Shown here piece after piece: positions 26,811 through 63,557 of a stretch of 64,000 bases of DNA (position 1 is its first letter; each line of letters opens with the position of its first letter). A model generated the notes under the pieces. It had not been told where the DNA came from. It did no database searches and saw only the letters and a list, made by a program, of their open reading frames with translations. Both the position numbers and the translations under genes were made by a program. Origin of the DNA: Dimorphilus gyrociliatus (Eukaryota > Animalia > Annelida); assembly GCA_904063045.1 (NCBI GenBank), contig CAJFCJ010000013.1, positions 850,156-914,155 of the forward strand. Reading direction: 5' to 3'.

Positions 26811-27818
26811 TACTTTCGGGCAGTTAGCGAGAGAGAAACGGTAATAACGTATACATTACTCAAAATTAGGCTTAATTTTTATCATTATATATGACATTCG
26901 CTCATTTTTTATCCCAACCTTAAGATGTATTTATTGACCAGTGGCGACGTCTAACTGTAATACGGAATGGGAATAGGCTTAGTTCACTAAGTACGAAGAT
27001 CATTGAAACATTAGCTTCAAACAAACAATCTAAAAACGATTTATTATTCTGATGTATAAAAATGAAATCAACGCATTAACTTAGTTACACAGCTGTATTG
27101 TTTATATTTAAATAAACAAATTTATATACTTATACATAGAGTACTATGCACATATATGTATAATTACAGCAATATCAACATAAAATACAGGTTATGTAAT
27201 AACCTAGTTGTATATTAATTTCCGTTATTGGTCTCGTAATCAACAAAGTAGAACATACTGTGCGGAAAATATTCCAGGTGCTCTTTATAAAACTTTTACC
27301 CGATGTGTTGTATATCATTTATTTATAACTTAGACAGCCACCCCCAATCCCTACCTACCTACATCCTCACCTCTCTCTCTCTCTCTCTCTCTACTCTTAT
27401 TCCTTAATAGAAAAGAAAAGAAGAAAAACAAAGTGTTGTTTGTATTAGAAGATACGAATTGATTTGAATAAAAACACATAAAGCTACAAATTTAAAAAGA
27501 ATCGTTTCTTCATCGTCTCTTTTCACTTTTTAGTTTATTTGTTTGTTTTTTTTATTCGCTCCTCCATTTTATCCTTTCAAGACAGATAAATCTCCGAATT
27601 ATTATTTCAAATTCATGAATATACACACACACACACGCACGCAAGTAAAGAATAAAAAAAAAAATACAACCAAGAGACGCTCGAAACGTTGTAGACGGGG
27701 CGACTAGATATTAAAAAAAAAAAATGAAAGATGACGAGTATAAATATAAAAAAAGAACAATTAAAATGATCTTTCCGTTAGGCATATTGTAAAATCGACA
27801 GCACCATTTAGCATCTTC

Positions 27819-28604
27819 TCATTCAATTTGATTAACTTCCGCTACAACGTTGATTGTACTGGAGGCAACAGGTGCTTCATATCCAGCACCTATCATTGGA
27901 TCATACTTTATTCCATGGCTTTGCAGGAGCATTGTAAGTTTATCGATGTAATTGTCCTGCATTTCGCTGTATTTGCGGTATTTGCTTAGTTCCTCTTCCA
28001 CTACGCATTTAGCTGCCCTTTCGCGAGCAACACGGCGTTCGGCGTTGATTTTTACAGACATTATTACACCGTTCAGTATTCTTGATACTCGCCACAATCT
28101 TAGTACAATGATTAAACCTATTCCAGCCTGTACACCTTCACTATTAGCAAAGATTATATCTAATGTAAAGCATATAACTACGACGAAAGCATCGAACAGT
28201 TCCATCTTCATTTTGAATAAGTCTAATCTTAGGGCATATAACTTGAAAAGGACTTCGATAACGAATAAACTGAGAATCGATAGAGATATGTAATGGAATA
28301 TTTTTGGCAGTGTATCATCCGCAGCATTTTTATCTTGTGTCTGAACTTCTAGGAATCTGAGATCGAGTAATAATTCAGCAATAACTACCAAACAATCGAG
28401 TATAACGAGACTTATAACAACTATTTGGAACTGGGTGCTCAAAACGATTCGTGTTGTCTTATGACGGCAACTTCTCGGTGCTCTCTCATATTCTGAACTG
28501 GTAGAAAAACTAGAAGAGTCATCCTTCTCTATCACTCTCTCGCAATCATCCGTCAGTTTACGGAAACCCTCCATCCGCATCTGATTAGTTAAATTACAAT
28601 TCAA
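27819..28604 (-). CDS. HVCN1: Voltage-gated proton channel Hv1, intronless CDS
   Basis: Four TM helices; S1 LVILDCLVVIAEL with the selectivity Asp; S4 LRLWRVSRILNG (RxWRxxRxxN signature); C-terminal coiled coil. Confidence 0.95.
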   Translation of the reverse strand: MNCNLTNQMRMEGFRKLTDDCERVIEKDDSSSFSTSSEYERAPRSCRHKTTRIVLSTQFQIVVISLVILDCLVVIAELLLDLRFLEVQTQDKNAADDTLPKIFHYISLSILSLFVIEVLFKLYALRLDLFKMKMELFDAFVVVICFTLDIIFANSEGVQAGIGLIIVLRLWRVSRILNGVIMSVKINAERRVARERAAKCVVEEELSKYRKYSEMQDNYIDKLTMLLQSHGIKYDPMIGAGYEAPVASSTINVVAEVNQIE

Positions 28605-53177: not shown

Positions 53178-56100
53178 CTACTGTCCGATAAGAAAGGCTT
53201 CTTTTTTGACTGGGTAAAGCGCAGTTTCTGTTTTCACGAACCAACATTTTACGTTTCCTCGATAAGTCAAAAGGGCTTCAAAGGGTCTATTATTCATAAC
53301 AACGACACCTACCCTTTGGCCACTTTGTACAGGTTCGTGAACATTTTGATAATTTCTTTTTACGTGTCCTAGAATTCCTCCTACGTGTTTGGTTAACCTT
53401 CGGTCAGGGATTCCGACATCTAAATGCTTTACTCCAAAGGCATGACTGCCTAGTTTAATTTCAACTTCTAAATCATCAGGATATTCGCCAGTTTGTATTG
53501 TTATTGCTTTTGTAGCTTGATCATATACCATTAGGATATCGCCAATTGTCAAGGCTCCTTCTTCTCCGTTAAATAACATAGACGTCTGTCTTACTCCATT
53601 AGTATCAACAACCACAGAGTTGCTAGGACTTTTCACGATCACTTTATGGAAGTAAAAGTCATCTAATAAAGTAGCCGAAACAGACCATCCTGCAGCAGTA
53701 TCATTCAGTAAAATGTAACTGTCTCCAGATTGTCCAAATAGATCAAAGCAAAGGGGCTTCAATGCAGTTGTATCTGGCCAAACAATAATATGAGGATCAT
53801 CTGTAATTTCTGATGATGTACACTTGCAGGGCATGCAGGTCATGTCATTAGTTGGATTATAATCGTTATACGATATTACATTTTCCGAGCCATCAAATTC
53901 AGATACAGCTTTAACGGAAACACATATCATCAAGTCTTTCCTTTTACAATCTTCTTGAGTCAGAGTCACCGTATAACGGGTTATAGAAACCCCTCTTGTT
54001 GTGCCGGCAAATAAGGTGGCTCCTTCCAGAGTTGCTTCATCAGCTTTTGGTTTACTGTTTGATTCAAGTGGGAAAACATATAATCGGTAGAAGAAGTTCT
54101 TCGAAGGAGGATTTTTTGGATATCCGATATCCTGATCACCAATATTCGCAATATCGGCAACAACCTCGACAATACTACCATCAGGTACAATTTCATAAGT
54201 TGTTTTTCCAGTCTCCTTTACTCTTAAATTGCTTATCATTACGTCCACTTTAGAAGTTTCGCATTCTATATCCATACACGCTAAATCATTAGCAGTATTT
54301 GGATCAATATAAGCAATAAAAGTTTCCGAATTTTTCAATACTCTAGCGGCTTTAGTGCAAACGCATATTTTATCACCACAATACGACTTGGAAAATTTAA
54401 TTGTTCGCTTAAGGCTAGCAGTTCTAGTTTGACCAACGTTCAAGGTAATATCGGATTCACTAGATGATACTTTGGGCCAAGCATTTCCAATACTTCCATC
54501 CAATCCTAACAATCCAACATGAAAAGCGAAATTGTCGGAAAGAGGCGATTGCGGATACGGTATGTTATCTCTTCCAAGATTCTTCAAATTTACTATTAAA
54601 TTCAAAGTAACGGAATCACCATTATTTGCATTGATGAAATATTTTGTTTCTTTAGAGTGCATTCTCAATGCAGATGTTTCAACATCAGCATAAACATCCT
54701 TAGAATCATCATATTTACATTCGATATCAATACAAGCCAAATCATTTTTCGTATTCGGATCAATATAAGAGACAAATGTCTCTGAATTTTGTAGTTGTCT
54801 CGCCGGTTTGGTACATAAACAAATTGTGTCTCCGCAAAACGACTTAGAGAATTTTACTTTTCGCAATAATGCAACTGTCCTCGTTTGATCCACGTCCAAC
54901 TGCATATCAGAGTCTGGTGAATCAACTCTGGGCCATGAATTTCCAATAGTACCGTCAAAGCCCAAAATTCCAAGACGAAAGACAAAATTTTCAGTTAGAG
55001 GAGATGTAGGGAAATCAATATCGTCTGGACCCAAATTTCTTAAGTTTGCTCTTAAGTTAAAGTTAATAAATTGTCCATTTTCAGGATTAACAATTTCAAA
55101 GCGTTGATTTCCAGATTCCATTCTCAAATTCGAAGTTTCTACATCCGACTGAACGTCAATAATTGGATCAAGCTCACAGGAAATATCCATACATGCCAAA
55201 TCATTCTCTGTGTTCGGATCAACGTACGCAGCTCGATTTTTACCATCAATAAACAGTTTGGTCGATTTAGTACAAAGGCAGATTTTATCACCGCAAAATG
55301 ATTTCGAAAATTTTACTTTTCTAGTCATCGTCACAGTTCTTGATTCACCGCGATCCAAGCTTATATCAGTATCGGATGAAGAAACTTTTGGCCACGAGTT
55401 ACCAACTGTTCCATCGAGTCCAAAAATTCCAACTCTAAATACAAAGTTGTCAGAGAATGGCGAAGTTGGAGAGTCAATGTCATCAGGTCCCAAATTTCTG
55501 AGTCTGGCTCTTAATTCGATAGTAATTGTATCTCCATTTTCGGCAGACATTCCATAAACAATTTCATTATTCATTGTTCTCAATTGCGATGTTTCAACAT
55601 CAGCATTTGTCAAAGGATTTGGTTGTGGACAAACGATATTCATGCAAGCCAGATCGTTGGCAGTATTCGGATCGATATAAGCGATATGAGTTTTACTGTT
55701 TTTCAAGATTCGGGCAGCTTTGTTGCAGAAACAAATTTTATCGCCGCATAGGCTCTTTGAAAATTTGATCTTTCGCGACATTCTTATAACTCTGCGTTGT
55801 CCGTCATTCAATGATATATCTGTATCAGAAGAAGACACCTTTGGCCAACTATTACCAATTGAGCCATCGGCGCCAAGAATTCCGACTCTGAAAACAAAGT
55901 TATCATTCAATGGAGACTGTGGAGAGTTGATGTCGTCTGGTCCAAGATTATCAAGTTCAGATCTAAATTCAAGAGTGAGCGTTTCGCCGTTGTTGGCTGT
56001 AATCTCGTAGTCATTTCGATTGCTACCAGTTCGTAAGTAATTTACTCTAACATCAGCCATTGGGGTTGAGTCACTATCGCATTCGATTAACATACAAGCC

Positions 56101-59080
56101 AAATCGTTTCCTGTGTTTGGATCTACGTAGGCAACTTCATTCTTTCCATTAGAGAAGACTTTCTTAGGTTTGACGCACAAACAAATTCTATCTCCGCACA
56201 TTGATTTAGAGAATTTTATTTTCCTTGTCATGTATACGGTTCGCGATTGGCCGTGATTGAGACTGATGTCGGTATCAGCAGAACTGGCCTTGGGCCAAGT
56301 GTTTCCAATTTGTCCGTCGAAACCCAAAATTCCAACAAGGAAAACAAAGTTTTCCGAAAAAGGACTTTGAGGAGAGTCAATATCACTGTCTCCAAGATTT
56401 CGTAATCTTGCCTTAAGGTTAAGAGTAACGCTATCACCGTTATCAGCATCAATTTTGTAGACATTGTCATCATTTTTAGTTCGAAGATTAGAAACTTCAA
56501 CGTCGGAAACCCCAACAAGATTTTCACCATCACAAACAAGCTTCATACAGGCCAAGTTATTTGCAGTATTGGGATCTATATAAGCTACATAACTTTTTGA
56601 ATTTTTAAACATTCTCGTTGCTTTTACGCAAAGACATATTTGATCGCCGCAAAGTGATTTAGAAAATTTAATTTTTCTAGTCATCTTGACTTCTCTCATT
56701 TGTTGATTATTAAGCGTTATGTCTTTCTCAGACGAAGACGCTTCAGGCCAAACATTGGCTGATGTTCCATCAAGACCAAGTAGACCAACACGAAAAGAAA
56801 AATTTTCAGTCAACGGAGATTTGGGATATCCAATATCTTTATCGCCGAGATTCTTAAGTCTGGCTTTCAATTCAAGTGTAACTGTTTCACCATTATTGGC
56901 GTTAACTTGATATTCAAAATCACTACTGAAAGTTCTCAGGTCGACAGCTTCAACATCTGACAAACCATTATCGCAGACAATATTCATACAAACTGCATCG
57001 TTGCTCGTATTTGGATCGTTATATGCAATGTAGGTTTTACCATTTCTAAATACTCTTGAACTCTTGACACAGAGACAGATTTTGTCGCCACATAACGATT
57101 TCGAGAATTTAATTTTTCTTGACATGTAGAAAGTTTTGTGTTGACCTTCGTTCAGACTGGCTTTGGTGTTTGACGACACTTTGGGCCAGTTGCCTGCCGA
57201 TGATCCGTCTAAACCTACTATACCAACTTGCAAGACGAAATTATCGGTCAGAGGAGACTGTGGTGAACCAATATCGCCTTGCCCCAAATTTTTCAATCTT
57301 GCTTTCAAATCAAGTGAAACTATTTCGCCATTATTGGCATTTATCACATATTCATTATCATCGTTGAATCTCTGCAAGTTAGATGCCATTACATCAGTAA
57401 GCCCGTCGGTTTTCGAGCACTTAATTTTCATGCAGGCCAAATTGTTACTGGTGTCTGGATCCGTATATGCAATATAAGTCATTCCATTAACAAATTTTCT
57501 CATGGCTTTAACGCACAAACAGATTGTATCACCACATAACGACTTGGAGAAAGTAATATCACGTTTGAAGGAAACTGTCTTGGATTGGCCATTGTTTAGA
57601 GATATATCGGTATCTGAAGAGAGTGCTTCAGGCCAAACATTTCCAATAGTACCATCAAGGCCAAGTATTCCAACGCGAAATACAAAATTTTCCGATAATG
57701 GATTTGTCGGAGAAGATACATCACCATCTCCCAGATTTGTGAGTGTTGCTTTCCAGTTAAGGGTAACTTTATCACCATTATCGGCGCTTATTTCGTATTC
57801 ATTTTCATTATCTACAGTTCTTAAGTTTGAAGCTTTAACATCTGAATCAGTTTGAATATTATCAGCTTCGCATACGATATCCATACAATCCAAATCATTG
57901 TTTGTATTGAGATCAGTATAAGCCAAATGTGTTTTTCCACTCGAAAAGTGACGTTCAGCTTTGACGCAAGCACAAACTTTTGAGTTACATAACGATTTCT
58001 TAAATGTAATATGACGATAAAGAGAAATAGTCTTTGTTTGTTTGTTATATAAGGTTGTACTACTATCACCGGAAGATGCCTTGGGCCATGTATTTCCGAT
58101 TGATCCATCTAATTTCAAAAGTCCAAGTCTAATATCGAAATTATGGTTTAGTGGAGCTTTTGGAGAATCAATATTTTCTGTTCCATGATTTTTAAGGTTG
58201 ACTTTAAATTCCAATTTAATATTTTGACCTTCATCAGCATTTATATTATATTTAACACCATCAGTCTTTGTCCTCAGATTTGACACTTGTACATCAGATA
58301 CACCTGAGGGTGATAAAATACTAGTTAAGAGATATTTCTTATAATAATAAGATAAGTTTTACCTGTAGCAGGAGCAGAATTGCAAGTTACTTTAATACAA
58401 GCTAAATCATTCTCCGTGTTTTGATCCTTGTAAGCGATATAAGTTTTATCTTTAAAAACTCTTGTAGCTTTCACGCATAGACAGAGAAAATCATCGCAAA
58501 GAGATTTTTTGTACATGACTCGTCTTTTAAGCTCAATAGTCTTAGATTCTCCATTTTTTAGTGTTATATCGCTGTCGGACGACGCCGCTTCCGGCCATGT
58601 ATTACCAACTGAACCGTCCACCTTTAGAAACTGTTAATGGTAACATACAGATTAATAATATTAAATATAAACTTTTAACCAATAGATAACTTACTCCGGC
58701 AAGAAGTTCAAAATTATCAGTAAGCGGCAAAGATGGTGTCAATATATCGTCATTTCCTAAATTCTTTAAATCTGCCTTAAGTTCAAATGTCAGGTATTCA
58801 CCTTCGTTCGCATTTACGTTGTAAGTATTCTTTTCATCAGACGTTCTCAAGTTCGAAACCTTCACGTCTGCTATTGTATCTTTTAAGGGGAAAAAATAAA
58901 AAGATACATTATTAATAAACAATTCGAATAAAGTCAAAAAAAAGAGAAAGAGAGAGAATAGAATGGAAATATTCATGCAGAATAAGAACGTATTAGAAAC
59001 AAAAAGTATATATATTTACCAGCTAACAATCCCGATAAGAAGCTTAAAATTAAAGCCAAAAACAGCCCTCGCAGTGCCAT
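53178..59080 (-). CDS. Secreted 1879-aa protein: signal peptide, 11 tandem ~150-aa Cys-containing repeats, DPH site and ITIH-C-like terminal domain
   Basis: Exons 59080-59020 (MALRGLFLALILSFLSGLLA), 58879-58695, 58630-58363, 58303-53178 sum to 5640 nt in frame. Repeat consensus sDVexsNLRT..y.i.A.NG..v...A.L.NLG..DI..P..P...NF.F.vG..g.DG..gn.WP.....L..G....R.i.FsKs.CgdxiCxC........Y.DPnt.NdlaCm.i.C. Confidence 0.9.
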
Positions 59081-59598
59081 TTTTTTGCTTGATTTAAAAC
59101 TTTATTTGAAGAAAATTCTTCTCTTAATTTAACATTTACTTGAAATATCGAGCATTTAGTAAATAACTAACAAAATCCTGGGTATTTATACAAAGTTGAG
59201 TGTTCTTAACAGTTTGTCGAGTTTGATAGTTTTTATGTTGAAGTTGTACTAGCTTAATTAAATACTTTAGGTCTTTCAAAATGGCTTCTAAAAGTTAAGT
59301 TATAAGTAATATCATTTGTTTCAAATTGATAGTGTACGCGTTCAAGTGAGTAGTGTCACTGAAAGTTACTCAAATTTTTTAGCATCTAAACAGCTCGAAC
59401 AATCATCGGCTTAGAAATAGAACGAAAATTTTCTAAAAATAGTTTGATTAGAAAAAAAGTAACGCATTTGAAATTATCTAGACGCCTACGTAATCGTAAA
59501 TATGAATAAGACGAACACCAGACAGTTTGAACTGTAAAATACTCTAGTTTGACGCATTAATTAATTATACGTTCTTATGAGTGTCGCATCGCCTTTGC

Positions 59599-59655
59599 TA
59601 TATAAACAGCGAACGCTCATTCGAGAGACGCTACGGCCTAAGTATCTTCTACGAG
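59599..59655 (+). promoter_or_regulatory. TATA box and non-coding first exon of the calcitonin-type gene
   Basis: TATATAAA at 59599-59606, Inr-like TCATTC at 59617-59622, donor GAG|GTAAGT at 59655, and acceptor TTTCAG at 59841 just before the ATG at 59855. TATA-Inr spacing is shorter than usual. Confidence 0.45.
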
Positions 59656-59854
59656 GTAAGTTTTCCGTGCTATATTTATCCTTTTCAGTAGAGAAAGATA
59701 GGTGTTAGAAAGGAAAAAACCAAAGTGCCAAAAAGAAATTGGCAAATTTTACTCTGGAGATTCTACATTTTATCTAATTATTCAATAAATGAATTTAATT
59801 GAGCTCTTCTCTTTCTCCAAGATTTATTTCCATTCTTTCAGAAACGCTCGCCAA

Positions 59855-60830
59855 ATGAAAAGTATCCTGTTTATCTTCGCCGCTCTCCTAATAGGCGTTC
59901 TCTTCGCGGATAAAACGAAGGAAGAGGCGCTAGGGTAAGACAATTTTATTCCCTAAAATCTACATAAATATATAGATATACATCAAAGATTTTATATATA
60001 TATATATATTGTGTATAATGTATACGTGAGAATTAGTAGAGAATGACTGATGAAGGTATTAATGACGTCAGTTTTGCCCCTTATCTTTCTTTATACAACT
60101 CGAGCGGCAACTTGCGATAGATGTTGTAAGGCTTCATTACATGTTCATTTTCTACTGTTTTTTTTTTCTTCCTTATCGACAACCTTAAAAACTGTCGGTA
60201 AAAGCATCAGAGTTTACGGAGTAATTAAGTTCATTGAACGATCTTTTCATTTGTTTATTCCGTATTCTTTTTTTATCCTATCAATGTGTATCTATCCCCT
60301 ATTCAGTTTTCCGGTTTCAATTAGTTTATAATTATGTAAATCTTAGATACAATTCGCATTGTATAAATATATTTTGTCAAATAAATAGTGCACTTAAACA
60401 AATGGACGAAAGTCGAAGAGGAATCGGAGCACTCCGTATGGTTATGGACGAAATCGAAACGGATATATCAAGACAAAAGTACGTGTTTTTCCAATATATA
60501 TATATATATATGTATATATTTATATACATAGGATAATAGTTTAATCTTCTTCTCTTTCTCTCTTCTCTTAATGATAAATTCTTATTCAAACATTAATATA
60601 TTTGTATAAAAATGTATAATTTAAATGCATAAATTAAAGGAAGGTGGGGAAATTAGATAATAAATATACAATAGAAGTGTAAATCATTTAGGAGAAATCC
60701 GTGTCACATCGGCTTGGGCAATACTTACCAATGCGCATTAGCTACCTTGGAAAATGAACCAGGCGTCAATGTAAACGGTCCAAATTCGCCAGGCAAAAGA
60801 AGGTTTTTAAACAATAGCCAAAACCCCTAG
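59855..60830 (+). CDS. Calcitonin-type neuropeptide precursor, isoform A (102 aa); mature NPCHIGLGNTYQCALATLENEPGVNVNGPNSP-amide
   Basis: Exons 59855-59934 (signal MKSILFIFAALLIGVLFA), 60389-60478, 60692-60830. The splice creates a K|R dibasic site; peptide has an N-terminal Cys pair and ends P-G-KRR; 309 nt in frame. Confidence 0.8.
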
Positions 60831-61558
60831 ACAAAAATTTTCATCCTTCCTTCCAACTCAAAATGATACAAATATTTTTTTTTAATATATACATATAAAA
60901 GGAGGAACAGAAATGAAGTTTATATTATTTAAATAAGCTATCTTCATTTCCTTTCCTCTCAACATATTCTTAATGATTTATTATACATATAGAGAGATTC
61001 GATGATCATGTCCCTTTCCCTTACAAAAATATAAATTCTTTCCTTATCCAATATTGTAAAAATATTCCATTGACATTTTCCCTTACTTATTCTATTCTAC
61101 TCTATCTATCTATCTATTTCTCTTTCTCTCTTTTTCTTCTTCTTCCCCTTCTTCTTCTTCTTCTTCTTCCCAGTAATTAATTTTATAAGTATACAAGATT
61201 TATGTTTATATTCGGAGATTGAAAAAATGAAAAAAATATTGATTATGGGACAGGAAAAGGATAATAAAAAAAAATTATTAATGTATATATATATATATAA
61301 AAATATATATACATAGTGTATAGATTGTATAGAATTTTTATCTAGTTAGTTAGATATTGTCTCTTATCCATAAGGAAAATAATTGCTTGTTTTACTCATC
61401 TTTTCTTATTGGGCAGCGAAAAAATTTCTACCGTTAAGAGAAAGCAAAAAGCATTAGGCCTTATCCGGAAATTATTATCAGAGATGGATAACGATTTAAT
61501 AAGCGAACAGTAAGTTATTACTTGTTTATGTTTAAACAGAGTTGATTGATATATACTA

Positions 61559-61593
<35 letters not shown>

Positions 61594-62165
61594 TGTGTAT
61601 TTATACAAAGTAGATCTCTTATATATATATATATATATATATACTACTACTACAATAGTAATATACAGTATATTGTATAGTAATCAACTTATCGGAAAAA
61701 GTTAATAAAAATCAAATAGGTTTTATTGGCAGATCTTTATACAAAAAAAGAGTTTTTTTCTAAATAGAAAACGTACGTGTGTAGTAAATTTGGGAGGACA
61801 TTGTTCAACGGAGCATGCAGCCGCTGTTGCCCAACAATGGCATTATTTAAATAGTGCGATGAGCCCTGGTAGGAAACGAAGAGATACAAGAATGTTCAAG
61901 AAACTTGTTGACGGCTCAGTAAGTATTTTCTCATATTTTAAACTCTCCCCTATCCTCCCTCCTAGCTCCCTTTCCCCATTCTTCACACCCCTTCACCATT
62001 CATCAAACTTTCCCTGTAAATAAGCAACTTTATATTGGCCATTTACTTTTTTTTTATAACATTTTATCCCTCCCCTCCCCCCTCACCTATTTAAATTATT
62101 TGCATTTATTGTACCTTGTTGTTTTACACCTGCTTTCTTTTCAGCTCATACGAGAGGTTGATTGA
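59855..62165 (+). CDS. Calcitonin-type neuropeptide precursor, isoform B (114 or 144 aa); mature TCVVNLGGHCSTEHAAAVAQQWHYLNSAMSP-amide
   Basis: Exons 59855-59934, optionally 60389-60478, then 61417-61509, 61768-61918, 62145-62165. KR-peptide-G-RKRR, 31 aa with N-terminal disulfide loop and C-terminal Pro-amide; all splice phases compatible. Confidence 0.85.
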
Positions 62166-63557
62166 AAGGAAAACAAAAGACATCTTCAAATATTTATAAA
62201 TCTTTTCCTGTCAAAAAGAAAAAAAAGAATAAAATTTGTATTGTAGATGGCGATAGGACTTGTCTTTAGTGTTTTATTAAGAGAGAAAAGCCTTTAGGTA
62301 TTCTAGACGGGTATAAAATTGAAAAAAAGAACTTGAATCGTTTTTCAAGGGCCATCCATCAAAAAAAGAGTCTGTAGTTCCAAACGAACATCTTGAATGA
62401 ATGAATAGACTCTAGTCTATTTAGTGACCGGTGTCACAAAGGACACGTGAGAAAGGTCAAGTTAGTTAAATAACGAAAATCTGAAGAATCGTCTATATTA
62501 GCGGGAGGAAATAGAATGGGAAAGGAGAGAAATTTCAGTTCAATTATTGAAGTTCAATAGAAATTATATAATAAGTAATTAGGGAGATAGTGGCTATTCA
62601 CTAAAAATTTACTACTTTAATAAGGTATGAGACCCCCTAGATAGAGAGAATTACGTAATAGAAGAATGATCTACTTCGTAGTATATCTCTCAGCTGGCGT
62701 GCATTTGAACAGAATTCAGAAAGAAATAGCATATGAATAAAAGCAAAGCCCATTATAAACAACATTTGCCAGGGTCTTTACCGACTTCCTGCTAATACAA
62801 TCCAGTAAGAAAGCTTCTAGCAGAATACAATCGAAACCTTTTTTATGAACGTTCCAAAATTGGGTGTACAAATTGTAGACCAAATATTCTTTATGAATAC
62901 CTTATAAAGTTCCTCTAGTCTCTTTTTTATATATTAATAGATATATTGTATATAGAGGGGAAGGGTTGGAGAATGAGATGACGGATTGAAAAAAATATTT
63001 GGTATAGGGGATAGTTTGGAAAAATCAATGTAATCTGGCGCAAAAAATAATTCAAATGTCCAATAGCCGCGATTCTTACTATAATACGAAATCGATTCCG
63101 AAACGTTAATCAAAGCGCACGAAAACGGTCAATTAATAGGGATTAGGCCGTAGAAGAAAAAAAAAGGGCTTTTCGAAATCAATACGCCATACTCCAAAGG
63201 GTTCCTTTCTTTCCTTCTCTCCCGCCTTCGAATAGCACAGTTTTGAACATAGGACGACGAAAGAAAGTCAGCTAGCCCGTAAAATTCGTAAATAATACAA
63301 CGATAGCCCATAAGCGCAGGTGCTGTATATTTTGGAGTGGTTAATGTGTACGCTCTTGAACACTTCAAAAGATTCCGACTGAACCGATAGACGGCGTTGT
63401 TAAAAATAAATTTCGTCGGTCCGCTATTCTTGTTTTCATATATCGACCAGATTGAACGCGGCCGTCGCACAGACAAGTGGCGAAATTGTACGCTGACCGT
63501 TCAGGTGTCCTATTCACCTGGTCTTATAGGCGTTCTCTATTGAAAGGATTACGAAAG

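What the first reader, a model, noticed from the sequence alone, without database searches (positions are those of the whole stretch)
59855..62165. One calcitonin-type gene, two different amidated peptides by alternative splicing
A single signal-peptide exon precedes two modules. Module A (60389-60478 + 60692-60830) gives KR-NPCHIGLGNTYQCALATLENEPGVNVNGPNSP-G-KRR and then a stop. Module B (61417-61509 + 61768-61918 + 62145-62165) gives KR-TCVVNLGGHCSTEHAAAVAQQWHYLNSAMSP-G-RKRR. Because exon A is terminal, one mRNA makes only one peptide. This parallels vertebrate CALCA (calcitonin versus CGRP) and insect calcitonin A/B splicing. Standard annotation would probably miss peptide A.
Basis: partly seen in the sequence, partly recalled or inferred. 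Interest (0 to 1): 0.82.

Follow-up and report, generated by a model that had tools for sequence, protein, structure and literature searches.

The report
Annelid calcitonin gene with optional peptide exon
This is the calcitonin-type neuropeptide gene of the tiny marine worm Dimorphilus gyrociliatus; both of its peptides are already listed in the genome paper's supplement, and RNA data show that the first peptide sits on an optional in-frame exon rather than a terminal one, so messages encode both peptides or only the second.

Summary

- **Splicing.** One mRNA therefore carries peptide A and peptide B in tandem.
- **Published forms.** A published D. gyrociliatus transcript joins A1 directly to B1 and encodes B only. 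A2 (60692-60802, 111 nt) is thus a cassette exon.
- **A-only form.** Its only RNA support is one read-through contig at about 2% of the spliced depth.
- **Annotation.** Annotation did not miss peptide A; the gene model lacks peptide B.
- **Family.** Exon B2 finds 80 lophotrochozoan calcitonin-type precursors. Many carry two or three peptides.
- **Conservation.** The Urechis unicinctus entries 'calcitonin-1' and 'calcitonin-2' differ by exactly the homologous cassette. The Paralvinella gene has the same phase-2 exon design.

The pattern matches sea cucumbers and brittle stars (one or two CT peptides per transcript), not CALCA or insect CT-A/B. It is a known gene with an ordinary mechanism. What is new is a modest gene-model correction and an annelid example of this splicing.

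The parts
59265..59655 (+). 5' untranslated exon. The start is where the RNA contig starts; the true transcription start is unknown.
   Evidence: X2 contig record 4 covers 59265-59653, and the joint 59655->59842 has GT..AG borders.
59842..59934 (+). Exon with the start codon (59855) and the signal peptide (26 codons + 2 nt, ends in phase 2).
   Evidence: Translation. Joint 59934->60389 is seen in X1 and X2. The sequence is identical to the N-terminus of both published precursors.
60389..60478 (+). Exon A1, the first acidic/amphipathic spacer (phase 2-2). It is present in all isoforms.
   Evidence: Translation and joints. It aligns to the first spacer of the Urechis, Owenia and other precursors. 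It is similar to B1 (z about 4.4, p 0.001 by shuffling).
60692..60802 (+). Exon A2, a 111-nt in-frame cassette (phase 2-2). It encodes Lys-Arg, peptide A (60696-60791), then Gly-Lys-Arg. Both splice sites are weak: the acceptor lacks a pyrimidine tract and the donor reads AAG|gttttt.
   Evidence: Joint 60478->60692 is seen in X1 and X2. Joint 60802->61417 is in an X2 contig at depth 922, and the X1 loose end at 60802 equals the start of B1 at 28 of 30 letters. The exon is skipped in the published transcript.
60803..60830 (+). Read-through extension of A2 to the TAG stop. It is used only if the 60802 donor is not spliced, and gives the A-only product, which equals gene model DgyrP10954.
   Evidence: Translation and the gene model. 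One X2 contig crosses the donor unspliced (60773-61096) at depth 17, against about 900 for the spliced forms. No AATAAA/ATTAAA occurs before 61263.
61417..61509 (+). Exon B1, the second spacer (phase 2-2). It has no start codon or signal of its own.
   Evidence: Translation. It is joined from 60802 and from 60478 in the published transcript. It aligns to the second spacer of its relatives.
61768..61918 (+). Exon B2: Lys-Arg, peptide B (61775-61867), Gly-Arg-Lys-Arg-Arg and the start of the C-terminal tail.
   Evidence: Translation. Joints 61509->61768 and 61918->62145 are. It finds 80 relatives at E<=1e-3 with the conserved motif C..NLGGHC.TE...QWHYLNS..SPG.
62145..62258 (+). Last exon: six codons, the stop at 62163-62165, the 3'UTR and AATAAA at 62228. 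The RNA contig ends at 62258.

Best explanation
This is the single calcitonin-type (CT) neuropeptide gene of the annelid Dimorphilus gyrociliatus. It has eight exons: a 5'UTR exon, a signal exon, then two duplicated modules (A and B), each made of a spacer exon and a peptide exon, and a short last exon. Every internal border up to B1 lies in phase 2, so the peptide-A exon (60692-60802) can be included or skipped without changing the frame.

- Included, the 181-residue precursor carries peptide A and peptide B in tandem.
- Skipped, the 144-residue precursor carries peptide B only.
- A small fraction of RNA reads through the weak A2 donor to a stop 26 nt later. If exported and translated, this would give an A-only product.

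What is shown: the exons, the joints, the frames and the homology. What is inferred from family knowledge: signal-peptide removal, cleavage at the dibasic sites, a Cys-Cys ring, conversion of the C-terminal Gly to a Pro-amide, and action on secretin-family CT/DH31-type receptors. At least 8 hormone-receptor-domain loci exist in the genome.
For: - Exons, frames and peptides.
- RNA joints including 60802->61417 come from two separate studies. X2 has a contig at depth 922. The X1 30-nt loose end matches the start of B1.
- Contigs break exactly at 60478 and 61417, while the A2 contig overlaps both by 30 nt. That is the shape of a splice bubble.
- The published transcript Locus_9944.0_Transcript_1 equals E1+A1+B1+B2+B3 with junction residue Asn (aa|c). 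DgyrP10954 equals E1+A1+A2 read-through.
- A2 has weak splice sites.
- Exon B2 finds 80 relatives, with E down to 5e-22 outside the genus. Many precursors have 2-3 CT peptides.
- Urechis calcitonin-2 and calcitonin-1 are 99% identical apart from a 67-residue cassette at the homologous borders.
- In the Paralvinella locus, spacer and CT exons are all phase 2-2.
- Peptide A aligns at 41-44% identity with the upstream peptides of Urechis and Paralvinella.
- Tandem CT peptides in molluscs and Capitella are described in PMC7200681.
Against: - The skip joint 60478->61417 was not listed among the joints of my own read laying. It rests on the published transcript and on the contig break pattern.
- All RNA evidence is assembled contigs, which cannot give isoform ratios, ends or strand.
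- X2 has no library record. I take it as RNA only because its contigs are spliced.
- No peptide, amidation, disulfide or receptor evidence exists for this species.
- Neither exon, nor a profile of 33 relatives, matches Pfam PF00214 or any calcitonin, CGRP or amylin chain in the PDB. The link to vertebrate calcitonin rests on hallmarks and the literature.
Confidence: 0.85

Rival explanations
1. One reading: the peptide-A exon is a terminal exon with its own stop and poly(A) site, chosen instead of the B exons as in CALCA. Each mRNA would then make one peptide only.
For: - The genomic frame runs into a stop at 60828-60830.
- The published gene model DgyrP10954 has exactly this form.
- One X2 contig reads through the donor (60773-61096, depth 17). 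Coverage of 13-20 reaches about 61128 and then falls to 0. That could mark an intronic 3' end.
Against: - The spliced A2->B1 form has about 50 times the depth of the read-through contig in X2 and is also seen in X1.
- There is no AATAAA/ATTAAA between 60831 and 61262.
- The read-through contig ends at a CT-rich repeat, where contigs break anyway.
- The supplement lists no transcript for the A-only form.
- Relatives carry the homologous peptide inside tandem precursors.
Confidence: 0.08
2. There are two genes: module B has its own promoter and signal exon.
For: Nothing beyond the 586-nt gap between the A stop and B1.
Against: - B1 starts in phase 2 with no ATG or signal.
- RNA joins 60802->61417, and the published transcript joins 60478->61417.
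- Relatives have the same spacer and peptide order in one protein.
Confidence: 0.01
3. Inclusion of A2 is tolerated splicing noise, or peptide A is a decaying copy without function. Only peptide B would be the working hormone.
For: - Peptide A is much less conserved than B. A versus B is only weakly similar (p 0.03).
- The A ring is longer, with 9 residues between the cysteines against 7 in B.
- A2 has weak splice sites.
- The A2 contig has lower depth than the B contig in both runs (5.9 vs 22.5; about 900 vs 1914). The tool warns against ranking by depth.
Against: - A2 keeps every processing hallmark: Lys-Arg before the peptide, two Cys, and Ser-Pro-Gly-Lys-Arg after it.
- It stays in frame.
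- It aligns with the upstream peptides of Urechis and Paralvinella, sharing the motif P-C-x-(I/L)-G-x-G-N..Y.C.L.
- The same cassette is alternatively present in Urechis.
- In oyster, different CT peptides activate different receptors (Schwartz 2019, as cited in PMC12638048).
Confidence: 0.1

Closest known systems
Lophotrochozoan calcitonin-type precursors (Platynereis calcitonin, Capitella three-peptide precursor, mollusc CALCI/CALCII, Urechis unicinctus calcitonin-1/-2)
   Same: - The layout is a signal peptide, then spacers with the motif ..R.G...L+..+..-D.D+, then one to three CT peptides. Each peptide has two N-terminal Cys and ends Ser-Pro-Gly plus basic residues.
- Peptide B is 59-78% identical to the last peptide of annelid, mollusc and brachiopod precursors.
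- Urechis has the same pair of forms, with and without the upstream peptide.
   Different: - Dimorphilus has two peptide exons. Paralvinella and Capitella have three, so the first type (C.LGGG..HC...DWLKSGLSPG) is absent here.
- Peptide A is short and divergent.
- I found no paper that describes alternative splicing for these lophotrochozoan genes.
Echinoderm CT genes (sea cucumber AjCTP1/2, brittle stars)
   Same: One gene gives transcripts that encode either two CT peptides in tandem or only the second one, through inclusion or skipping of the part that encodes the first peptide (PMC12638048, bioRxiv 10.1101/129783, PMC6002491).
   Different: - The phylum is different.
- Shared ancestry of the splicing pattern is untested.
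- The echinoderm peptides have been deorphanised on CTR and PDF receptors; these have not.
Vertebrate CALCA (calcitonin vs CGRP)
   Same: One gene with shared 5' exons, two CT-family peptides on separate exons, and an alternative choice at the first peptide exon.
   Different: - In CALCA the calcitonin exon is used as a terminal exon with its own poly(A) site, and each mRNA encodes one peptide.
- Here the first peptide exon is mostly an internal cassette and the tandem form exists.
- There is no sequence-level match to PF00214 or to PDB calcitonin-family chains.
Insect calcitonin A/B gene (Veenstra 2014, PMC4237046)
   Same: A protostome CT gene with a disulfide ring and Pro-amide peptides, and alternative mRNAs that give different peptides.
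   Different: In Zootermopsis, mRNA1 lacks the B exon and mRNA2 lacks the A exons, so the choices are mutually exclusive and B is present in several copies. Here B is in both well-supported forms (A+B and B-only) and A is optional.

Membership tests
Lophotrochozoan calcitonin-type (CT) neuropeptide precursor | Significant sequence similarity to precursors named calcitonin in related animals | tested here: met
   Exon B2 found 80 hits at E<=1e-3. These include Urechis unicinctus 'calcitonin-1' and 'calcitonin-2' (E 1e-17 and 3e-18, 73% identity), Owenia, Paralvinella, a chiton, Lingula and a bivalve.
Lophotrochozoan calcitonin-type (CT) neuropeptide precursor | N-terminal signal peptide | tested here: met
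   A hydrophobic N-terminus of about 18 residues is followed by charged residues. This was read from the sequence; no signal-peptide predictor was available.
Lophotrochozoan calcitonin-type (CT) neuropeptide precursor | Peptides of about 30-35 residues with two Cys near the N-terminus and a C-terminal Pro followed by Gly and basic residues, and with a dibasic site in front | tested here: met
   Peptide A has 32 residues with Cys3/Cys13 and ..SP-G-KR. Peptide B has 31 residues with Cys2/Cys10 and ..SP-G-RKRR. Both are preceded by KR. The invariant columns C, L, G, C, S, P, G of 33 relatives are all kept in B.
Lophotrochozoan calcitonin-type (CT) neuropeptide precursor | The mature peptide is disulfide-bridged, amidated and activates a CTR/CLR-type receptor | not testable with these tools
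   Only presence of candidate receptors could be checked. There are at least 8 loci with the secretin-family hormone-receptor domain PF02793 in the assembly.
Pfam PF00214 Calc_CGRP_IAPP (vertebrate calcitonin/CGRP/amylin) | Match to the family model | tested here: not met
   No Pfam hit at E<=10 for any exon or for any of 33 relatives. A profile of the 33 found no calcitonin-family chain in the PDB at E<=10.
Echinoderm-type CT gene splicing (one or two CT peptides per transcript) | A transcript that encodes both peptides in tandem | tested here: met
   Joint 60802->61417 has GT..AG borders, is in frame, and is seen in X2 and X1.
Echinoderm-type CT gene splicing (one or two CT peptides per transcript) | A transcript from the same gene that lacks the first peptide only | tested here: met
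   The published transcript Locus_9944.0_Transcript_1 equals the window's E1+A1+B1+B2+B3 exactly. It was not listed as a joint, but contigs break at 60478 and 61417 as expected for a bubble.
CALCA-type alternative processing (terminal peptide exon versus downstream exons) | The first peptide exon is used as a terminal exon with its own polyadenylation | tested here: inconclusive
   A read-through contig covers 60773-61096 at about 2% of the spliced depth. There is no canonical poly(A) signal for 430 nt, and contigs cannot show RNA ends.
CALCA-type alternative processing (terminal peptide exon versus downstream exons) | Each mRNA encodes only one of the two peptides | tested here: not met
   The A2->B1 joint gives a 181-residue open frame with both peptides.
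Insect calcitonin A/B gene | Mutually exclusive A and B exons | tested here: not met
   B exons are present in both well-supported forms, A+B and B-only. The insect scheme is described in PMC4237046.

The most novel reading that the evidence does not exclude
The optional 'first CT peptide' exon is an old, conserved regulatory device rather than a local quirk. [quoted passage not shown] With the weak donor and read-through stop, the worm gene may make a three-way choice (A+B, B only, A only) that includes a CALCA-like terminal-exon option. If so, alternative processing at the first peptide exon of CT genes could predate the protostome-deuterostome split.
Probability: 0.15. Interest if true: 0.55.

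Novelty: new member of a known kind. Interest (0 to 1): 0.3.

Why it matters
- **Gene model.** The public gene model for this locus stops after peptide A and lacks the conserved peptide B. The published transcript lacks peptide A. Neither shows the tandem form seen in RNA.
- **Evolution.** It adds annelids (Dimorphilus, and by GenBank entries Urechis) to the animals in which one CT gene yields one or two CT peptides by exon choice. That is useful for those who reconstruct calcitonin/CGRP evolution.
- **Experiments.** It tells anyone deorphanising CT receptors in this small-genome model worm that two distinct ligands, with separately regulated dosage, must be tested.
- **Limits.** It does not change any general picture. 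Tandem CT precursors and CT gene splicing are both known.

Tried and rejected
- **Pfam scan.** The four exon translations gave no family at E<=10. The 33 relatives gave only chance hits.
- **PDB profile search.** A profile of 33 CT peptides found no calcitonin, CGRP or amylin chain, only chance hits.
- **BLASTP between modules.** A2 vs B2 and A1 vs B1 gave no alignment. A shuffling test then showed that A1 and B1 are similar (p 0.001) and that the peptides are only weakly similar (p 0.03).
- **Paralogues.** Searches in the worm's own genome found each peptide exon only once.
- **X2 loose ends at 60891 and 60976.** Both lead to another contig of the genome (C11, about 921.6-922.2 kb). It shares only 18-24 nt AT-rich words with this intron, so these are unrelated transcripts laid partially. 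They are not alternative exons.
- **Genomic loci of relatives.** The look-up of encoding contigs had no record for the Urechis (P0005) or Owenia (P0003) proteins. Only Paralvinella could be mapped, and its last CT exon matched the model at just 70% identity.
- **Isoform pairs.** A search among the 80 relatives found only the Urechis pair.
- **Literature.** I found no paper describing CT alternative splicing in annelids or molluscs. The Urechis neuropeptide paper does not mention calcitonin in its main text.
- **Joined model.** In one search the exons were concatenated in memory only to count frame and stops. Only lengths and two short junction contexts were printed, and nothing was saved or sent.
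- **Word-index search.** The word-index protein search was not used, because its length window cannot reach full precursors from a single exon.
Full report
**What is in the sequence**

The region 59265-62258 (+ strand) holds a small, AT-rich, intron-containing animal gene.

- The start codon is at 59855. A hydrophobic signal sequence runs to 59934 and ends in phase 2.
- Exon A1 (60389-60478) encodes a spacer.
- An exon starting at 60692 encodes Lys-Arg, a 32-residue peptide with Cys3 and Cys13 ending Ser-Pro (window 60696-60791), then Gly-Lys-Arg. If read on in the genome, a stop follows at 60828-60830.
- Exon B1 (61417-61509) encodes a second spacer.
- Exon B2 (61768-61918) encodes Lys-Arg, a 31-residue peptide with Cys2 and Cys10 ending Ser-Pro (61775-61867), then Gly-Arg-Lys-Arg-Arg and a tail.
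- Exon B3 encodes six codons and the stop at 62163-62165.

**Which organism**

I checked this in two ways. The assembly has 77.9 Mb in 349 contigs, against the 73.8 Mb reported for that worm (PMC7854359). Two precursor sequences in Supplementary Data 2 of that paper are identical, residue for residue, to the exon translations of this window.

**What RNA shows**

Only two public runs hold the stretch. X1 is a marine metatranscriptome. X2 is a 2017 run of 'organism A' without a library record; its contigs are spliced, so I treat it as RNA. Laid on 58800-62900, they give these joints:

| Joint | Seen in |
|---|---|
| 59655->59842 (5'UTR exon) | X2 |
| 59934->60389 | X1 and X2 |
| 60478->60692 | X1 and X2 |
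| 60802->61417 | X2 contig (depth 922); X1 loose end |
| 61509->61768 | X1 and X2 |
| 61918->62145 | X2 |

- The 60802->61417 joint has GT..AG borders. In X1, a 30-letter loose end behind 60802 equals the first 30 letters of B1 at 28 of 30 positions. X1 differs from the window by a few letters elsewhere too.
- The joint keeps the frame. The codon ag|c gives Ser, and the open frame of 181 residues contains both peptides with no internal stop.
- 'Exon A is terminal' is therefore not the main behaviour of this gene.

**The second form**

The paper's 'Calcitonin-like 1' is a transcript, Locus_9944.0_Transcript_1. It is exactly E1+A1+B1+B2+B3, with Asn (aa|c) at the A1|B1 junction, so A2 is skipped. 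This gives 144 residues and peptide B only.

My read laying did not list this joint. However, in both runs the upstream contig ends exactly at 60478 and the downstream contig starts exactly at 61417. The A2 contig overlaps both by 30 letters. This is the pattern an assembly graph gives when two paths leave and rejoin. Contig depths are consistent with both forms being common:

| Run | E1-A1 | A2 | B |
|---|---|---|---|
| X1 | 20.5 | 5.9 | 22.5 |
| X2 | 760 | about 900 | 1914 |

The tool warns that such depths cannot rank parts of a gene, so I give no ratio.

**The third form**

In that supplement, entries with both a transcript and a model list both names. This entry lists only the model, and Calcitonin-like 1 lists only the transcript.

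RNA support for the read-through is one X2 contig across the unspliced donor (60773-61096). Its depth is 17, against about 900 for the spliced contigs. Coverage of 13-20 reaches about 61128 and is 0 beyond. No AATAAA/ATTAAA occurs before 61263, and the contig ends at a CT-rich repeat. I cannot tell a minor polyadenylated isoform from slow splicing at a weak donor. I put a real A-only mRNA at about 0.3.

**Why A2 behaves as a cassette**

- It is 111 nt long and phase 2 at both ends, like E1's end, A1 and B1.
- Its acceptor lacks a pyrimidine tract.
- Its donor has T at +3 to +6, whereas the constitutive exons have gtaag or gtacg.
- The two modules are an old tandem duplication. A1 and B1 are similar beyond shuffled controls (score 34 against 13.5 +/- 4.6, p 0.001). 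The two peptides are only weakly similar (p 0.03).

**Family**

Pfam finds nothing in any exon. A full HMMER pass with exon B2 over 1.84 billion representatives finds 80 proteins at E<=1e-3 and 28 at <=1e-10. Those with names include:

- Urechis unicinctus 'calcitonin-1' and 'calcitonin-2';
- unnamed proteins of Owenia, Paralvinella, the chiton Liolophura, Lingula and the mussel Sinanodonta.

All share C..NLGGHC.TE.A...A.QW.YLNS..SPG followed by basic residues. The columns C, L, G, C, S, P, G are invariant in 33 sequences and are kept here. About a third of the hits carry two or three CT peptides. This fits the literature: two per precursor in mussels and oysters, three in Capitella (PMC7200681), and a Cys-containing calcitonin besides DH31 in Platynereis (PMC3890597). 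The worm also has separate DH31-like precursors.

Peptide A aligns at 41-44% identity with the upstream peptides of Urechis and Paralvinella, sharing the motif P-C-x-(I/L)-G-x-G-N..Y.C.L...SPGKR-S.

The link to vertebrate calcitonin could not be shown by sequence. There is no PF00214 hit for any of the 33 relatives. A profile of them finds no calcitonin-family chain in the PDB. That link rests on the shared hallmarks and on published receptor work in oyster (Schwartz 2019, as cited in PMC12638048).

**Conservation of the splicing design**

- Urechis calcitonin-2 (218 residues) and calcitonin-1 (152 residues) are 99% identical except for one internal block of 67 residues that holds the upstream peptide.
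- The borders of that block align with the A1|A2 and A2|B1 borders here.
- In the Paralvinella palmiformis locus, the spacer-1, CT1, CT2 and spacer-2 exons all begin and end in phase 2. Spacer 2 ends gaa ca|gtaagt, as B1 does here.
- The module-per-exon, phase-2 design is therefore shared among annelids, and optional use of an upstream peptide exon is seen in at least two of them.

**Comparison with known systems**

The behaviour is the one described for sea cucumbers and brittle stars, where transcripts encode CT2 alone or CT1 plus CT2 (PMC12638048 section 13, bioRxiv 10.1101/129783, PMC6002491).

It differs from CALCA, which uses a terminal calcitonin exon or the CGRP exons and encodes one peptide per mRNA. 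It also differs from the termite/locust CT-A/B gene, which uses mutually exclusive exons (PMC4237046).

I found no paper in the library that describes this splicing for an annelid or mollusc CT gene. That is an absence in a limited library, not proof.

**Mechanism, shown and inferred**

Shown: one promoter region and signal exon, the exon joints, in-frame inclusion or skipping of A2, and homology of both peptides.

Inferred from established neuropeptide processing:
- cleavage at the Lys-Arg and Arg-Lys-Arg-Arg sites;
- removal of the basic residues;
- amidation of the Pro from the following Gly;
- a Cys-Cys ring;
- signalling through secretin-family receptors, for which at least 8 hormone-receptor-domain loci exist.

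Inclusion of A2 adds a second, divergent ligand to each precursor molecule, so splicing sets the A:B ratio between 0 and 1.

**Limits and procedure**

- All RNA evidence is contigs.
- No search used a joined model. Exons were joined only in memory for frame counting.
- Two loose ends in the intron proved to be unrelated transcripts sharing short AT-rich words.

**Verdict**

Both products are already in the genome paper's supplement. The proposed CALCA-like mechanism is replaced by an ordinary cassette exon. The new points are modest: the tandem isoform, the truncated public model, and the annelid parallel to echinoderm CT splicing.

Noticed in passing
window 58879-59265: The upstream neighbour, the Ig-repeat/ITIH-like gene at 53178-59080, is on the minus strand (intron joint 58879->59020 reads CT..AC). 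Its high-depth 5' part reaches about 59210, and the calcitonin gene's first RNA contig starts at 59265. The two genes are therefore head to head, with under about 200 bp between them, which suggests a shared bidirectional promoter region.
   Followed up: no
window 59840-61915 (run X1): A marine metatranscriptome holds spliced transcripts of this gene at 95-99% identity. Differences include C>T at 60425, A>G at 61453 and a Ser-to-Ala change in the B1 spacer. This worm or a very close relative is thus detectable in an environmental RNA sample.
   Followed up: partly
P0001 (Logan contig of 1698 nt; no locus): An unspliced open frame on a public contig carries a B2 exon 96% identical to this one (Val-to-Ala inside peptide B) and reads on into intron-like sequence. 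It probably comes from genomic DNA of a sister strain or species of Dimorphilus/Dinophilus.
   Followed up: no
P0002 and P0021 (no locus): Two database proteins consist of three or more repeats of a truncated CT start (..TCQLNLGGHCSTEN) followed by the same roughly 30-residue non-peptide stretch. They look like a tandemly amplified CT exon with flanking intron read as protein, in an unidentified organism.
   Followed up: no
window 60105-60314: A low-depth (5.3) X2 contig lies inside intron 1, while most other introns have no contig. It could be pre-mRNA or a small separate transcript.
   Followed up: no
G000: C7:1894056, C6:4645621, C19:2709816, C7:923869 and four weaker places: At least eight loci carry the secretin-family hormone-receptor domain (PF02793). 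They are candidate receptors for the CT, DH31, PDF and DH44 peptides of this worm.
   Followed up: no
L003 (Paralvinella palmiformis, JAODUP010000785.1) 27749-28201: The stored locus matches the annotated protein KAK2144101.1 at only about 70% identity over its last CT exon and tail, and the tool says the locus does not translate to the query. The public model there is probably a mis-joined prediction: 469 residues with a long N-terminal extension before the signal-like segment.
   Followed up: partly
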